A DNA stretch of 63,499 nucleotides, the filler included, from Platydemus manokwari (taxonomy: Eukaryota): the NCBI GenBank assembly GCA_037951405.1. It is 5 parts of 5 records of this genome, joined end to end, with 100 filler letters (N's around TTAATTAATTAA, not from the genome) between each part and the next. Parts side by side here need not be neighbours in the genome. Positions count along the whole stretch, not along the records: positions 29,639 to 52,338 come from JBBMOY011200320.1; 4 more parts are not named here. One strand, 5' to 3'. The translations under genes and the position numbers were made by a program. The notes beneath the pieces are model-generated. The model saw only the letters and a program-made list of their open reading frames with translations, was not told where the DNA came from and ran no database searches. Below, piece by piece: positions 31,792 to 46,714 of the stretch; position 1 is the first letter of the stretch, and every line of letters starts with the position of its first letter.

Positions 31792-34503
31792 GCCCATAAA
31801 ACCAAACCCAAAATGGGAAACGTGAGCCACCCAAAGCTGGAGAGTCGATTTAAACGCCTGATATCGGCAGGGATTCATTCCAAAAAATCTGCAAACTGCG
31901 AATTCGAATCTAGACAAACCAATTCCCAATAATGACTTTTGTGAAAAACTTGATTTTGATGATATTTTGATCATCTTGAAAAACTTCATTATTGTGATGA
32001 TATATTGACTCTTGAAAACCTTGATTATTTCAACTGTAATGATAACTTGATCATTTGACACTTGTTGATTTGACTTTCATGACATTTAATTATTATTGCA
32101 TAATCATTTGTAATATGTAATTATATTCAATTTTTATGATATGTAAAAAAACGAATTTTAAAATACGAAATATAAATTAGTATGATCAGACATAGACAGA
32201 TATATATTATTATTATTTATAAATCACGCCAGAGAGTGAAGAAGAAATATAATATTTAATTTTTAATGTCAAAGAAATACAATATTTAATTTTTAATGTC
32301 AATAAATTAATAATATAATTTCTAAGGTCAAATAAAGTAATAAAAATTTTAAGGTTTAGAACTTTTAAAATCATAAACATTAAGGGTCCAAGGTTAAAAT
32401 ATAGCTTAAAATTTACAAGAAGGATGGAAATTCCTAGGTACAAAGTACCGAATCTCAGCATCTATATAAGCTGATGGATTTCCATCACAGTTCACTCTCT
32501 TAAAATTCGATAAAAATCTGGTTATCTGAACTTTGGAAGAATTTTGAACTAAAGCGAAAACTAATATTTTTAAAGTAATAAATCACGAATTTTGTGCTAA
32601 ATGACGATTTTTGTTCATTAAACTCATATAATTTAACTCTAAAAGATCCACATTTGGAGAACATATAACTTATAAAATCAATAGTAAAATAATAAGGATT
32701 GGCTTTAGTTCCCACGGTCTCTGAGGGATAACCGTACTCAATTTGTTTTATATATATTTGTGTGAATTAAATTGCTTTGAGTTAAATTATCGTGTATAAA
32801 TTGGTTTTTAATTTCAATAAAAGTTTATGATAATTTTGATTGTTGTTGATTTGTAGACCTATATAAAAAATATAAAGGGACTCACGCTGTTAAGTTTTAT
32901 TGAACAGCAAACAAACATCTACCACAACCCAACAGTATTATTTTATGGATAAATTTATTATAAATAGAATTTAAATGAGATTTTCTGTAATGAGTTTTTT
33001 AGTTGTATTAAATTATATTATTTTGATTATTAAATATCTATACTCGATGATGGATGAAGATTCTAACAAGCATTATAAATATCCAATATTGTATTTTATA
33101 GATATTATTTTAATAAACTGACTTTATAAAATTTGTGTTTTTAGTTCCACGATCATTTGAGAATTGATATTAATGATATTGGAATTATAATAATAAATAT
33201 TGGCTAAGTACACGATAAGAGAGATATAATAAATAATCACTACATACACGCTTTAAATTGTTTTCTCAAAACCCCAACAATTTTATTAAAAAATTTTACC
33301 ATTTCATAAGAACTGATTTACTCCTGGAATTTATTTGAGCAAATAGAAGCGTAAAAGTTTAAGATTTCGTGTAGGGAAAAAACCGAATTGTTAACTCAAG
33401 TCTAATCTTATAACAGCACTTTTCTCATTTTTGTAGCATAGCCATCTAAATGATTCATTTGCATTTGTTGGAAATCATTTGAGGATTTCCGAAAGTACTT
33501 GTTTCCAACCTGGATATCTAATTCAAATGATCATTTTTTTGGAAATTTTAAACACCTCGTTTGCTTAATCTTTTTCATATTTACTAAAATTATTTTCAGT
33601 TTTTTAGATCGATATATTTTTGCAATATTCTCAACAAATTTTATTTTAGGACCACTTCTTAAGAAATGGGTATTTTCTGAAACTATAAAATTAAAGACGG
33701 ATCCTGTATTTGCTTCAAATAACCTACATAAAGAGTTTTAATTTTAAAAGTTAAAAAAAGATAAAAATTTATTGCAAGAATTAATTCTTTAAACTATCTA
33801 GGCTTTTGGTTTACTATATTTGATCTTGTTTCACTCTGTGAGAGCATTAATAAATTAAGATTTATCCTATTAATGTTAATATCCATTAACGTAATTATAT
33901 TATATTATTTCTGATTCAATATCTGTGTCATCGAGATTATAAATCAGATTATAAATCCCAGAATCAGTTTAATATTCTTTGATTTTTAACATTTTCATTT
34001 CATTTAGTCGGTCAGATTAATTACTATTTTTATAATCATTATCTAGAGGACATCTTCAATTTCTACAGTGCTGGCTGGCTAATCGTCGAAATCCCACTAA
34101 AAATTAGTCCATAATTATCATTTATGAAAATTTTTGAAAAATATATATCCTTATAACCCTGTTATATAAGCTGGCATTTAATATAGAAATATAGAATTTT
34201 AAAAAATGAAACAATAATATTTATAATAAATTTTAAATTTGAACAGAAATTTTTATTTTTGTGTAGATTTGTATAATATTTTTCAACTATTTATACTAGT
34301 TGCTAACTTTATATAATAATTATAATTAATTGTAGCTGACAGGCAATAAATTTCGACGCATTATTGCTTATCAGCGTTTTAAAATCTCGTCGGGTTCTGC
34401 GTGAATTTTTTGCCATAATATAGTAATCTTGGATTTTGGGTTACTTGATGAATTGATCTCAAAATTATTATTTAAACAGATGGTTATTTTCTAGATTTCT
34501 TTT

Positions 34504-34563
34504 AGTCATATCTGTCTCCAGTCCGAGACACCGATGAAGCCCATTGAAGGCCGAAAATGGACT
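34504..34563 (+). ncRNA. Degenerate type III hammerhead ribozyme motif 1
   Basis: AUC triplet (34510-34512); stem I tgtctc/gagaca with a 6-nt loop; core cCgatga (one change from CUGAUGA); stem II agcc/ggcc; GAAA (34553-34556); stem III agtcat/atggact. Confidence 0.6.
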
Positions 34564-34632
34564 TTATTCTCATCACAAAATTACCATCATCATCATTGTA
34601 GCTATCGTTCCTGAAGGTTTCGAGAGATCATC

Positions 34633-34686
34633 CTTTATATCCCTGAACTGGGATACTGATGAGGCCTACGGAGGGTCGAAATAGAG
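34633..34686 (+). ncRNA. Type III hammerhead ribozyme motif 2 (cleavage triplet apparently damaged)
   Basis: Stem I tatccc/gggata with a 6-nt loop; perfect CUGAUGA (34656-34662); stem II ggcct/gggtc; GAAA (34678-34681); stem III cttta/tagag. Confidence 0.7.
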
Positions 34687-37600
34687 CTAATTTTTCAATT
34701 TATTCATTGTATCTTGACCACTTAATAATTCTTTGATGCACTTTTGTAGTATTAATAAATTTTCAGTAAAATCTCAAATAAAGTCCAAAAAATAATGGAT
34801 TGACAACATTTGTCGCACTTACATTTTAATAATATCAATATTTAGCAATCAGGAATCTGTTAGTATTTGGAAAAATTTAATCTACTATTTTTTATTTATA
34901 TCTGTTATAAAGAGTTCTAAAATTTGGTTTGGAACTTGTGTGTACATGTGTGTGTGTGGGTGTTTGCGTGCAGGTTTACAAATTCTCTGCCCATTCATTG
35001 TACGATTATCCTAGAAAACATGCCATCACCAATATCAAACCTAGAAAACATTCAAATTTGATGAATATTTCTGATCGATGAGCTGACATAACCAATGAAA
35101 GTTAATTGTTATTTGTTATCAAATCGTGGAACTCTTACTAGATAATCATTTAGTTATAAACTTTCAAAATAAGACGATTTGTTTAATGAGTTTTGAAACT
35201 ACAAACAATGTTTCAAGGAAAAAAAAAGACTGAAATGAATAAGCTGATTTCTGCGAATACGCACTTCAGAAGATGAAAATTTCTTCATTTAATCCTCGCA
35301 TTTTTTCTATTAGCTTATCTCAGCGAATAATCTTTTTTTCTATAAAAATGAAACTAACGAAGAATGTACATAGACATAATATTATTTCCACTGATAGAAT
35401 ATGCGTACTAGTATGTGATGGTTAAAAAATACATGATCCATATAAACTTGTTAGAGCTTCATATAACCACTAGACGTCTTATTAATTAAAAATAAATAAT
35501 TGTTCCGATTTTTTGAGTTTTTCTTTTTATATGATTTACATCTAACATATTGATGCTTGTAAAAAATGTGAATTTTTTCTACGAGATGAAAATGTAATAT
35601 CAAATGGTTTAGCGAATGAAGTACGTTTTGCAAAATATTATCTTATTGTTAAATATGCCGGCAGATAATCACCGCATGGATTTGTGTCTATCGGTCGCTG
35701 GAGTGAAACAAATTATGACGAATAATTTCTCATAAGTAAAAACAATATTTGAATTATTGTGAACTCCTTTTATCTTATCACTGTTATTTCTTGGTATATT
35801 AAATCAAATATCAGTCTCAATCATATTACCAATATCACTTGGCCGTTATCTATTTGTATTTCTTCCAATAAAAATCTGACTTAAATATTAACAAATCGAA
35901 TAAAAGCTATTGTGTTTATCCGAAAAAAATACGTAATTTCAAAGGACTGTTTATAATCAAATTGGTCAACCTTCTCATTTGGGGCCAGAATGTCTTATTT
36001 TTTCTGTATAACTCAAATTATTTCATTTTTTATATTATCTATAAAAGTTAATCGACATTTATTTGCCAATGCATGACAAATTGTGATATTATTATAATTC
36101 ATGAAGCATTGGAATTTTAAATGGGCTGAAAAAATAAATCATTTTGATATCAGCAACAGTTTTTCTCGATATAAATATATTAGCAAGGACTGAATTGCTT
36201 GTTTCGTTTTGACCCGATAAAATCATGTGTTGGAAAAATTATGGTGAGAATTTGAGAATTATATAGAAATTAAATTAGAAAATTTTGATTTTTTTTTAAT
36301 ATACTATTAATGTGATATATGAAACACGATATGATTCTGTTAATTAGCATGACCCTGTAATCAGATCTGACAGTTGTGGGGATTTGAATATAAATTGGCA
36401 AATTAACCCACAGCAGAGTTGAGGTGTAGAGAGTCTTCGGATGAAAATATACTAATTTATATGCAAAAATGAATTGTTTCAGAATTATTTTCGTTTAAAT
36501 TTTAATGTTAGAAGAAAATTTATTTTCTTTTGTAATGCTTGCTTTTTTTGCTGATAGAGTTGAAATGCAAATATTAATGTCAAAAAGAATTAAAGCGAGC
36601 TTCCATACCAATTAAAATTGTTGTCTATTAGCAAGGTTGTATTGACAAAACAAAAATGATGAGTACAATTTAGATATCAAAAATTTATAATTATAATTTA
36701 TCAGAGTTAAATTATGCTAATCGATTAGTTTTCATTTTTTTATTTAGATTGTGTTTGTTTAAATATCTTATTTTCATTTTCATTTATTCAATATGGCTAA
36801 TCTTTATAAATGAATTAAATTTAATTGTATACTGTTTAAAGTTGATTTAATGGCCTGAAAATTAGTATTGTATAAAATTAGTTGGTTAATTTTTTAATTA
36901 AATTTATTCATTTCATTTTGACATTTAAATTTTTATCTAATTATAAATCAAATTTTGAAGTTAATAACAATCGTTGAATTGAATCGAGTTTCGAAAAATG
37001 GTTGATAATAAACTAATTAAATAAATTGATGTGTTTCATTTGGTGAAGCTTTGGTTATAATTTTTATGATATATAAAAGTTGATCAGTTTAAAAATCACG
37101 AAAACTACATCGCACTTTTGTTCGGAATTGAATGTAAAAGTTTTGCTTCGGTGATCCATTCATTCCGGTTTATTTGTGTCCGCCGTTTATATATAATATA
37201 TATGAGTGTTTCGAATGGGGAAATAAATATGAAAATCTATTTTTATAAAATTTGTATAGAAATAACATACCTAAAAATGCGATAGAAAAAGTCGAAATTA
37301 AAGAGATGAGAATTATTTTAAAGTCATATTCAGTACAAATACGGAATTAATACTGAATCAATGGTGACTGAATTGTTTGTATGGTCAAATTATATTAAGT
37401 CCTTACGTTTTTAAAATAATTTTCTATTAATGAGTATGTTAATATATTAAAAAAACTTCAACTTTCCAAAATAAAAATTTATTGAAATATAAAGATTTAA
37501 TCACTAATCACAGTTATTTAGTTTTAAAGAGAAATGCGATCAAATTAACTAGCTATTTCTAAGCACACGCGTTTTCCAGCATTTTTACATATAAATCACA

Positions 37601-46227: not shown

Positions 46228-46714
46228 ATGGATCAGGTAAGATAAATTTTCATGTCATCAAGTATTATATACAAAATTTTTAAAATAGAACGAACGTGCA
46301 TTTCAAAAACAAGAAGTTAGAGGTAAGAAGGGTTCCAGAGATAGATACTTCAAAAGTGTTGGTTTGGGATACAAAACCCCAAGGGAAGCCATAAATGGCA
46401 ACTACATTGATAGAAAATGCCCATTTACTTCTGATGTCAAAATCAGAGGACGTATCCTTAGTGGCATTGTTATGAAATTGAAAATGAACAGAACTATTGT
46501 CATCAGACGGGATTATCTTCACTACGTTAGAAAATATAACAGATTCGAAAAAAGACACAAGAATTTGTCTGTCCATTGCTCACCAGCTTTCAGAGATATC
46601 GATGTTGGAGATACCGTCATCGTTGGTGAATGCAGACCATTGGCCAAAACCGTTAGCTTCAATGTTTTGAAAATTTCCAAAACATCTTCAAACAAATCAA
46701 AAAAGAAGTTTTAA
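46228..46714 (+). CDS. RPS11: 40S ribosomal protein S11 (uS17), complete, 144 aa
   Basis: Exon 1 46228-46236 (MDQ), 52-nt GT-AG intron, exon 2 46289-46714: NERAFQKQ...[23 protein letters not shown]...IRGRILSG...[25 protein letters not shown]...[22 protein letters not shown] at 46721-46726. Confidence 0.97.

What the first reader, a model, noticed from the sequence alone, without database searches (positions are those of the whole stretch)
34504..34686. Two tandem, sequence-divergent type III hammerhead ribozymes behind a GIY-YIG remnant
Seen: two motifs with cleavage positions ~125 nt apart share one architecture (stem III, triplet, 6-bp stem I with 6-nt loop, CYGAUGA, stem II, GAAA, stem III), yet their stems differ (tgtctc/gagaca vs tatccc/gggata), which looks like covariation. 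Motif 1 differs from a canonical core by U4C, G10.1A and apparently one lost base in stem III. Motif 2 becomes canonical if 'tc' is restored (cttta[tc]tatccc), giving the same AUC triplet. Established: Penelope-like elements and retrozymes carry hammerheads, and metazoan ones are mostly type I or minimal. Inference: this is a decayed copy of a Penelope-like or retrozyme family with a heterologous double type III cassette that could excise, and perhaps circularise, a ~125-nt RNA. A weaker third core-like string (ctgaagg...cgaga, ~34611-34625) lies between them.
Basis: partly seen in the sequence, partly recalled or inferred. Interest (0 to 1): 0.8.

Follow-up and report, generated by a model that had tools for sequence, protein, structure and literature searches.

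The report
Decayed twin type III hammerhead repeat
Two real but mutated self-cleaving hammerhead ribozymes of the "plant/viroid" type III shape sit 125 bases apart inside one worn copy of a much-repeated non-coding element of an animal genome, which is unusual because animal genomic hammerheads are normally type I.

Summary
The two motifs are real. A descriptor requiring a 6-bp stem I, CYGAUGA, stem II and GAAA finds exactly these two sites in the 22.7-kb piece, against 2 hits in 2000 simulated pieces. They align to each other without a gap.

A covariance model built only from 21 environmental type III hammerheads scores them 52.5 and 34.0 bits. The model is partly circular for motif 2.

Contigs of one public DNA run show that about 34210-34684 belongs to a repeat family, with 11-95 distinct contigs per listed position. 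Most other copies carry the canonical letter where this copy deviates: U4 in motif 1, and stem III pairs in both motifs.

This copy is therefore decayed by substitutions. Read in register, motif 2 cuts after UUA at 34637.

I found no GIY-YIG, RT, PBS, PPT or LTR, and the third "core" is not supported. A uS17 exon in the same piece shows the host is a metazoan.

Best reading: a dead copy of a retrozyme-like non-autonomous element whose two different type III ribozymes share one stem III and would release a 125-nt RNA that could circularise. Expression and cleavage are untested.

The parts
34504..34563 (+). Hammerhead 1, type III, decayed. Stem III 5' strand 34504-34511, site C34512, stem I 34513-34518/34525-34530, loop 1 34519-34524, core CCGAUGA 34531-34537 (C at position 4), stem II and loop 2 34538-34552 (A at 10.1, U for G in loop 2), GAAA 34553-34556, stem III 3' strand 34556-34563.
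   Evidence: Sequence. R1 scores it 34.0 bits, E 2.8e-9. Descriptor hit. Most other copies have T at 34532, C at 34508 and A at 34558. A loose-end consensus of 24 contigs reads CTGATGAGACCCATGGAA. The hammerhead fold is 8.0 kcal/mol above the MFE.
34564..34628 (+). 65-nt linker between the two ribozymes.
   Evidence: No Rfam or R1 match. The linker is shared with other copies: 32-42 contigs differ at 34576, 34581 and 34620. One contig continues from 34684 through 32 other letters back to 34608, which indicates a further unit in that copy.
34629..34689 (+). Hammerhead 2, type III, with an intact core. Stem III 5' strand 34632-34636, site A34637 (triplet UUA), stem I 34638-34643/34650-34655, loop 1 34644-34649, CUGAUGA 34656-34662, stem II and loop 2 34663-34677, GAAA 34678-34681, stem III 3' strand 34681-34687. 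Stem III keeps only 3 of 5 pairs in this copy.
   Evidence: R1 scores it 52.5 bits, E 1.7e-15 (partly by construction). RF00008 gives 14.1 bits. Descriptor hit. Most copies have A at 34635, G at 34630 and C at 34649. The hammerhead fold is 6.0 kcal/mol above the MFE, which pairs UCAUC 34628-34632 with the core GAUGA.
34513..34637 (+). The 125-nt RNA that would be released if both ribozymes cut. It would carry a 5'-OH and a 2',3'-cyclic phosphate.
   Evidence: Geometry of the two motifs. The fold is not unusually stable (MFE -22.5 kcal/mol, z 0.02). No RNA data exist.
34210..34503 (+). Non-coding left part of the same repeated element; the left boundary is approximate. It contains the palindrome 34337-34377.
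   Evidence: 37-95 distinct contigs differ from the window at 34266-34472, and 74 at 34508, so many copies share the junction into hammerhead 1. The window's own contigs with 0-2 differences (taken as single-copy) end at 34260 and begin again at 34655. No similarity to the hammerhead unit. No Pfam, tRNA or Rfam match.

Best explanation
The stretch is a dead, truncated copy of a high-copy, non-coding mobile repeat of an animal genome. Its 3' part carries two different canonical type III hammerhead ribozymes 125 nt apart.

How the family probably works (inferred). A read-through or own-promoter transcript folds both ribozymes. Each cuts after its N-U-H triplet, releasing a 125-nt RNA with 5'-OH and 2',3'-cyclic phosphate ends. 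In most copies the two ribozymes share the same stem III 5' strand (GUCCUAU) although their stems I and II differ. Joining the ends, by the ribozyme itself or by an RtcB-type ligase, would therefore rebuild one complete hammerhead on a small circle. This is the retrozyme life style; spread would need a reverse transcriptase supplied in trans.

What is shown:
- the motifs are real;
- they belong to the canonical type III class;
- they belong to a repeat family;
- other copies have canonical letters where this copy deviates.

This copy. Hammerhead 1 (C4, an A.C mismatch at 10.1-11.1, two broken stem III pairs) is very likely inactive. Hammerhead 2 has a perfect core but a weak stem III and a competing fold, so it is probably weak or inactive.
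For: 1. Motifs and geometry.
2. Chance is excluded: 2 hits observed against 0.001 expected per piece.
3. Same class as natural ribozymes. The 26-nt core/stem II/loop 2 pattern retrieves 20 metagenome contigs and 1 viral contig. All have a 6-bp stem I, a loop 1 ending in CC and a loop 2 of AYGGA. Stems I and III, which the pattern did not select, show strong covariation: 97.9% of cells paired and 10 pairs with double changes. Model R1, built without window sequences, scores the two motifs 52.5 and 34.0 bits and nothing else in the piece above 9 bits.
4. Repeat family. 2092 contigs were laid on 32000-37500. At the positions listed within 34266-34649, 11-95 distinct contigs carry a letter different from the window's. 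The window's own contigs with 0-2 differences resume outside that range.
5. Direction of the differences. Of the 7 listed majority differences inside the ribozymes, 6 move towards the canonical hammerhead: 34532 gives U4; 34508, 34558, 34630 and 34635 give stem III pairs; 34649 gives the loop 1 CC. One is neutral (34642) and none moves away.
6. The two-ribozyme arrangement recurs without indels in other contigs (records 5 and 6). Another contig shows a further unit after hammerhead 2 (joint 34684 to 34608).
7. Only one polarity carries a ribozyme, as in retrozymes and unlike viroid-like replicons.
8. The host is a metazoan: a uS17 exon in the same gap-free piece.
9. This copy folds poorly. The hammerhead fold lies 6-8 kcal/mol above the MFE, against 0-4.9 (mean 1.7) for 21 intact relatives.
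Against: - No RNA evidence at all. The only run holding the stretch is a contig set not on record as RNA.
- No full copy of the family could be fetched, so element ends, unit number and the majority letters at unlisted positions are unknown (128 variant rows were not shown).
- The independent Rfam model gives only 14.1 bits, E 6.9, for motif 2 and nothing for motif 1.
- R1 is partly circular. Its stem II and loop 2 were selected with a pattern taken from the window and from the contigs of run X1 laid on it.
- The ~290-nt left part is not explained by a simple tandem retrozyme model.
- The 125-nt product has no unusual stability (z 0.02).
- The A.A mismatch at 15.2/16.2 of hammerhead 1 is not seen to be corrected in other copies.
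- The tool warns that contig depth is not copy number.
Confidence: 0.6

Rival explanations
1. A SINE-like or other non-autonomous element, or a satellite, in which the hammerheads only trim the transcript. They would define a 3' or 5' end, as HDV-like ribozymes do for R2 and other non-LTR elements, and no circular RNA intermediate would exist.
For: A conserved ~290-nt non-ribozyme body lies directly upstream, and many contigs share its junction with hammerhead 1. The ribozymes sit at the 3' end of this copy. The 125-nt product shows no special stability.
Against: One ribozyme would be enough for end trimming, yet the family keeps two, and sometimes more units, at a fixed spacing. A type III cut at the 3' end would leave nearly the whole ribozyme on the discarded fragment. 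No tRNA, 5S or 7SL head was found.
Confidence: 0.2
2. A remnant of a Penelope-like element, with the hammerheads being its pLTR ribozymes downstream of a GIY-YIG endonuclease.
For: PLEs carry hammerheads in their terminal repeats (PMC7229834). The element is repeated.
Against: No Pfam GIY-YIG or RT match in any of 17 stop-free pieces within 32503-35011. No ORF above 116 aa exists in the whole piece. PLE hammerheads are minimal type I with a very short helix III, whereas these are full type III with closed helices I and II.
Confidence: 0.05
3. Endogenised cDNA of an exogenous viroid-like or satellite circular RNA. The nearest environmental relatives include such RNAs. The cDNA would later have been amplified as ordinary repeated DNA.
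For: The same hammerhead class occurs in metatranscriptome contigs that carry a Hairpin-meta1 ribozyme on the other strand (L001, L003, L012, L017), or a hammerhead on both strands (L016). The pattern is absent from 185,579 prokaryotic genomes.
Against: No ribozyme lies on the minus strand here. The 125-nt unit is shorter than the viroid range of 220-450 nt given in PMC8781251. A conserved non-ribozyme body is attached in many copies. The resemblance is limited to the ribozyme itself.
Confidence: 0.1
4. A chance resemblance with no ribozyme ancestry.
For: Rfam Hammerhead_3 gives only E 6.9 for motif 2 and nothing for motif 1.
Against: Expectation is 0.001 per piece for one descriptor hit, yet two are seen 125 nt apart in register. 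Other copies carry the canonical letters. Intact relatives also fall below the Rfam gathering score, at 31.7-46.5 bits.
Confidence: 0.02

Closest known systems
Plant LTR retrozymes (Cervera et al. 2016, PMC4918200)
   Same: Canonical type III hammerheads with a 6-bp helix I, a 6-8-nt loop and a short helix II (description in PMC7936874). Two ribozymes per non-coding, non-autonomous repeated element. The predicted product has ends that can be ligated into a circle.
   Different: Plant elements have ~350-bp LTRs, a PBS, a PPT and 600-1000 nt between the ribozymes, with GC above 55%. Here the ribozymes are 125 nt apart, no LTR, PBS or PPT is present, the host is an animal and the surroundings are 27% GC.
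Metazoan non-LTR retrozymes (Cervera & de la Pena 2020, PMC7229834; bioRxiv 10.64898/2026.07.22.740005)
   Same: Animal host, low GC, short ribozyme-bearing units repeated head to tail, many copies, no coding capacity.
   Different: Those carry type I hammerheads, often with a weak helix III that acts as a dimer, in near-identical units of about 150-450 bp. Here the ribozymes are type III, the two units are only about 52% identical across the ribozyme, and a ~290-nt non-repeated body is attached.
Environmental type III hammerheads of viroid-like circular RNAs and viral contigs
   Same: Same lengths of helix I, loop 1, core and helix II. Loop 1 ends in CC and loop 2 reads AYGGA. The 26-nt core/helix II string is the same up to 5 degenerate positions.
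   Different: Those sit in GC 0.43-0.73 contigs. Some are paired with a hairpin ribozyme or a second hammerhead on the other strand. They have strong GC-rich helices III starting C-G at 15.2/16.2. The window's family has an A/U-rich helix III (GUCCUAU) and a ribozyme on one strand only.
Atypical type III hammerheads of termite and dipteran genomes and of HDV-like agents (de la Pena et al. 2021, PMC7936874)
   Same: Type III hammerheads encoded in invertebrate DNA genomes.
   Different: Those have an extended helix I with an internal loop and an extra hairpin, a 6-bp helix II and a GCCR/YGGC pseudoknot, and the termite ones occur as isolated motifs. Here the architecture is the ordinary compact one and the motif belongs to a large repeat family.
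Penelope-like element pLTR hammerheads
   Same: A hammerhead inside a repeated retroelement-like sequence of an animal.
   Different: Minimal type I topology; adjacent to an RT/GIY-YIG ORF. Neither is found here.

Membership tests
Hammerhead ribozyme, type III | Conserved core C3-U4-G5-A6-N7-G8-A9 and G12-A13-A14 | tested here: met
   Motif 2 has CUGAUGA and GAAA intact. Motif 1 has C at position 4 in this copy, but 38 other contigs carry T at 34532. The feature is therefore met by motif 2 and by the family, and not by motif 1 of this copy.
Hammerhead ribozyme, type III | A15.1-U16.1 pair followed by the cleavage-site nucleotide H17 (not G) | tested here: met
   Motif 1 has U34511-A34556 with C34512. 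Motif 2 has U34636-A34681 with A34637.
Hammerhead ribozyme, type III | Helices I and II closed by loops, helix III open (this sets the topology) | tested here: met
   6-bp helix I with a 6-nt loop, and a 15-nt helix II/loop segment, in both motifs.
Hammerhead ribozyme, type III | A stable helix III and G10.1-C11.1 closing helix II | tested here: not met
   In this copy, motif 1 has an A.C mismatch at 10.1/11.1 and two broken helix III pairs. Motif 2 keeps 3 of 5 helix III pairs. The hammerhead fold lies 6-8 kcal/mol above the MFE, against 0-4.9 for intact relatives. Other copies carry pairing letters.
Hammerhead ribozyme, type III | Score at or above the Rfam RF00008 gathering threshold (48.5 bits) | tested here: not met
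   14.1 bits for motif 2 and none for motif 1. The threshold is a poor test for this class: intact environmental members score 31.7-46.5 bits.
Hammerhead ribozyme, type III | Mg-dependent self-cleavage | not testable with these tools
   Needs in vitro transcription of natural copies.
Non-LTR (metazoan) retrozyme | Head-to-tail units each carrying a hammerhead, at least two in a row | tested here: met
   Two units lie here, 125 nt apart. Other contigs keep the pair without indels, and one shows a further unit. TRF does not see the array because the units are too diverged.
Non-LTR (metazoan) retrozyme | Type I hammerhead | tested here: not met
   The topology is type III.
Non-LTR (metazoan) retrozyme | Expression as linear and circular RNA of unit length | not testable with these tools
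   No RNA run holds the stretch, and the single read-laying run had contigs only.
LTR (plant) retrozyme | LTRs carrying the ribozyme, tRNA-Met PBS, polypurine tract, 4-bp TSD | tested here: not met
   No PBS-like site with 2 or fewer mismatches, and no purine run of 10 nt or more, in 33800-35200. The ribozymes are 125 nt apart with no long direct repeat. The only candidate flanking repeat is a 9-nt ATTTTTCAA at 34278 and 34690, which is unresolved.
Penelope-like element | ORF with RT and C-terminal GIY-YIG endonuclease next to hammerhead-bearing pLTRs | tested here: not met
   No ORF above 116 aa in the piece. No Pfam RT or GIY-YIG match in 17 stop-free pieces. A heavily decayed remnant cannot be fully excluded.

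The most novel reading that the evidence does not exclude
An animal genome harbours an active or recently active retrozyme family built on canonical type III hammerheads, the class regarded as typical of plants, viroid-like RNAs and phages. Two heterologous ribozymes share one helix III, so a circle of only about 110-125 nt would carry a single reconstituted ribozyme. That would break the 'type I in animals, type III in plants' rule. It would also give a direct animal counterpart to plant retrozymes and viroid-like RNAs, possibly through horizontal transfer.
Probability: 0.3. Interest if true: 0.7.

Novelty: new variant of a known kind. Interest (0 to 1): 0.5.

Why it matters
Reviews state that metazoan genomic hammerheads are type I, and that type III motifs belong to plants, subviral RNAs and prokaryotes or phages (PMC7229834, PMC7761336). 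Type III motifs in insects are mentioned only as atypical isolated cases (PMC7936874) or as 'in preparation' (PMC7761336).

A large animal repeat family with ordinary compact type III ribozymes, most like those of environmental viroid-like RNAs, would add a missing link between animal retrozymes, plant retrozymes and free circular RNA replicons. It would also be a candidate for a very small ribozyme-bearing circular RNA.

There is a practical lesson as well. The Rfam gathering threshold misses this whole class, so such families are probably under-annotated.

The locus itself is a dead copy with no likely function for the host.

Tried and rejected
- Rfam at gathering score on the piece: nothing. 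Rfam with E-values on the whole piece: only three weak snoRNA-like matches.
- Third core at 34611-34625: no model match. Rejected.
- GIY-YIG/PLE: Pfam on 17 stop-free pieces found nothing relevant.
- tRNA or SINE head: ARAGORN found none.
- Similarity of the ribozyme unit to either flank: not significant. TRF does not detect the 125-nt period.
- Fetching other copies through a spurious ORF over the ribozymes with the search for homologous proteins: no candidate.
- Prokaryotic genomes: 0 exact pattern hits.
- Sequence strings in the literature: only engineered ribozymes.
- de la Pena & Garcia-Robles 2010 (PMC2941103) is not held.
- Host identity from uS17: 72-81% identity to arthropods, molluscs, rotifers, flatworms and vertebrates alike, with none closer. 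Only 'metazoan' can be said.
- PBS, PPT and TSD search: only a 9-nt direct repeat of uncertain meaning.

Full report
**1. What is in the sequence**

On the + strand there are two motifs with full type III hammerhead topology.

- Motif 1 (34504-34563) reads AGUCAUAU-C | UGUCUC-CAGUCC-GAGACA-CCGAUGA-AGCCC AUUGA AGGCC-GAAA-AUGGACU.
- Motif 2 (34629-34689) reads CCUUU-A | UAUCCC-UGAACU-GGGAUA-CUGAUGA-GGCCU ACGGA GGGUC-GAAA-UAGAG.

MAFFT aligns the two without a gap. Helix I (6 bp), loop 1 (6 nt), the core, the helix II/loop 2 segment (15 nt) and GAAA all have identical lengths. Helix I differs by two double changes (G-C to A-U and U-A to C-G).

In this register the cleavage sites are C34512 and A34637, exactly 125 nt apart.

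**2. More than chance**

I wrote a descriptor requiring a perfect 6-bp helix directly 5' of CYGATGA, a 4-9-nt loop, at least 3 of 4 helix II pairs and GAAA. It finds exactly these two sites in the 22.7-kb piece, both strands. It found 2 hits in 2000 Markov-1 simulated pieces.

The public Rfam models are weak here. Nothing reaches gathering score. Hammerhead_3 gives 14.1 bits, E 6.9, for motif 2 alone.

That threshold is not a fair test for this class (see section 3).

**3. Which hammerhead class**

I built a 26-nt degenerate pattern for the core, helix II, loop 2 and GAAA, taken from motif 2 and from a loose-end consensus of other copies. It hit 20 JGI metagenome contigs and one IMG/VR contig. 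It hit none of 185,579 prokaryotic species genomes.

In every hit, the 18 nt upstream form a 6-bp helix I with a 5-8-nt loop ending in CC. A helix III follows the GAAA, which the pattern did not ask for.

On the 21 distinct sequences, 97.9% of cells pair. Ten pairs show double changes, and slid controls fall to 33-43% paired.

Some of these contigs carry a Hairpin-meta1 ribozyme on the opposite strand (L001, L003, L012, L017). L016 carries a hammerhead on each strand. These are viroid-like circular RNAs. These intact ribozymes score only 31.7-46.5 bits with RF00008, below its gathering score of 48.5.

Covariance model R1, built from these 21 sequences alone, scores motif 2 at 52.5 bits and motif 1 at 34.0 bits. 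Nothing else in the piece scores above 9 bits. The helix II part of that score is by construction for motif 2. Helix I, loop 1 and the overall geometry are independent evidence.

The architecture is the ordinary compact type III described for plant retrozymes and subviral RNAs (PMC7936874, section 3.1). Pairing of loop 1 CC with loop 2 GG is my inference; both dinucleotides are invariant, so there is no covariation to test it.

**4. It belongs to a repeat family, and this copy is worn**

One public run holds the stretch. It is kept as contigs and is not on record as RNA.

Laying its contigs on 32000-37500 at 80% likeness placed 2092 contigs. The window's own contigs, with 0-2 differences, cover 33012-34260, 34490-34684 and 34655-37500. 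At the positions listed between 34266 and 34649, 11 to 95 distinct contigs carry a letter different from the window's.

The listed majority differences inside the ribozymes are:

| Position | Change | Effect |
|---|---|---|
| 34508 | A>C | restores helix III pair 16.4-15.4 of motif 1 |
| 34558 | T>A | restores helix III pair 16.3-15.3 of motif 1 |
| 34532 | C>T | gives CUGAUGA in motif 1 |
| 34630 | A>G | restores a helix III pair of motif 2 |
| 34635 | T>A | restores a helix III pair of motif 2 |
| 34649 | T>C | loop 1 of motif 2 then ends in CC |
| 34642 | C>T | C-G becomes U.G, neutral |

Six of the seven move towards the canonical structure and none moves away.

Twenty-four contigs leave the alignment after 34518. 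Their consensus reads UGAUCC-GAGGCA-CUGAUGA-GACCC-AUGGAA. That is a canonical core with G10.1, and its helix I 3' strand (GAGGCA against GAGACA here) would keep pairing with the window's UGUCUC through a U.G wobble.

This copy therefore decayed by substitutions.

Contig records 5 and 6 span both ribozymes with 0 gaps at about 82% identity, so the heterologous pair at fixed spacing is a family feature. One contig continues from 34684 through 32 other letters back to 34608. Some copies therefore carry a further unit of about 110 nt.

The tool warns that contig depth is not copy number, so I give contig counts only.

**5. Activity of this copy**

This is inference from the established hammerhead core (named positions) plus folding.

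- Motif 1 has C4, an A.C mismatch at 10.1/11.1, U for G in loop 2 and two broken helix III pairs. Its hammerhead fold is 8.0 kcal/mol above the MFE.
- Motif 2 has a perfect core but only 3 of 5 helix III pairs. Its MFE pairs UCAUC 34628-34632 with the core GAUGA, leaving the hammerhead fold 6.0 kcal/mol above it.
- The 21 intact relatives lie 0-4.9 kcal/mol (mean 1.7) from their MFE.

**6. Surroundings**

- The piece is 21-32% GC, whereas the ribozymes are 48-50% GC.
- There is no ORF above 116 aa.
- Seventeen stop-free pieces within 32503-35011 have no GIY-YIG or RT match.
- There is no tRNA, no PBS or PPT and no other Rfam family.
- The ~290 nt upstream (about 34210-34503) is also repeated, and its junction with motif 1 is shared by about 74 contigs. 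It has no similarity to the ribozyme unit.
- A uS17/RPS11 exon at 46364-46714 shows the host is a metazoan. It is 72-81% identical to orthologues from many bilaterian phyla, with none closer.

**7. Mechanism**

*Shown:* two homologous, diverged type III hammerheads lie in one orientation inside a repeat family whose other members have canonical letters.

*Inferred:* transcripts are cut at both sites and release a 125-nt RNA. In most copies both ribozymes have the same helix III 5' strand (GUCCUAU), although helices I and II differ. Ligating the ends would rebuild a complete ribozyme on a circle, as in retrozymes. Retrotransposition would need an RT supplied in trans.

*Rivals:* end-trimming ribozymes of a SINE-like element (0.2), an endogenised viroid-like RNA (0.1), a PLE remnant (0.05) and chance (0.02).

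**8. Comparison and novelty**

Animal retrozymes and PLEs carry type I hammerheads. Type III is the mark of plant LTR retrozymes, subviral RNAs and prokaryotes or phages (PMC7229834, PMC7761336, bioRxiv 10.64898/2026.07.22.740005).

Type III motifs in insect DNA are on record only as atypical extended forms. Those in termites are isolated motifs; others are reported in dipterans (PMC7936874). There is also a remark 'in preparation' (PMC7761336).

This is therefore a new variant of a known kind: retrozyme-like, in an animal, with compact type III ribozymes, a heterologous pair and a very short unit.

The locus itself is a dead copy. The interest lies in the family.

**9. Limits**

- No full second copy could be fetched.
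- 128 variant rows were not shown.
- No RNA data exist.
- The host is not identified below Metazoa.

Noticed in passing
window 32184-33103: A second repeat family with more contig variants than the ribozyme element: 78 distinct contigs differ at 32422. It includes a 30-nt tandem array at 32242-32350. One contig joins 32507 to 34213, which hints that the two repeats are neighbours elsewhere too.
   Followed up: no
window 34337-34377: Palindrome GCTGACAGGCAATAA...TTATTGCTTATCAGC inside the left part of the element. Other copies have its loop in the inverse orientation: opposite-strand joints at 34335-34407 and a loose-end consensus before 34361.
   Followed up: partly
window 34278-34286 and 34690-34698: A 9-nt direct repeat ATTTTTCAA flanks the ribozyme-bearing part and could be a target-site duplication. 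However, family contigs still differ from the window at 34266/34267, left of it, so the element's ends remain unresolved.
   Followed up: partly
window 46364-46714 (+): Exon of ribosomal protein uS17/RPS11. It is 72-81% identical to orthologues from beetles, mussels, rotifers, flatworms and vertebrates, with no closer relative in 5.8 billion proteins. The host is a metazoan lineage poorly represented in the database.
   Followed up: partly
L001, L003, L012, L017, L016 (JGI metagenome contigs, 1.2-2.0 kb): Contigs carrying this type III hammerhead class on one strand and an Rfam Hairpin-meta1 ribozyme on the other (46.2-60.6 bits). L016 carries a hammerhead on each strand. They are probably viroid-like circular RNAs.
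   Followed up: partly
L007 (AACY023259265.1, 1432 nt): A marine shotgun DNA contig with four type III hammerheads on one strand (17-77, 429-488, 619-679, 1214-1274). The first and last are nearly identical, so it looks like a repeated multi-ribozyme unit of about 1.2 kb.
   Followed up: no
Rfam RF00008 against L001-L017: Intact, covarying environmental type III hammerheads score 31.7-46.5 bits, all below the gathering score of 48.5. Standard Rfam annotation therefore misses this class.
   Followed up: yes
window 34628-34632 with 34658-34662: UCAUC just upstream of motif 2 is complementary to GAUGA of its core and sequesters it in the predicted MFE. This could be chance or a built-in off-state.
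   Followed up: no
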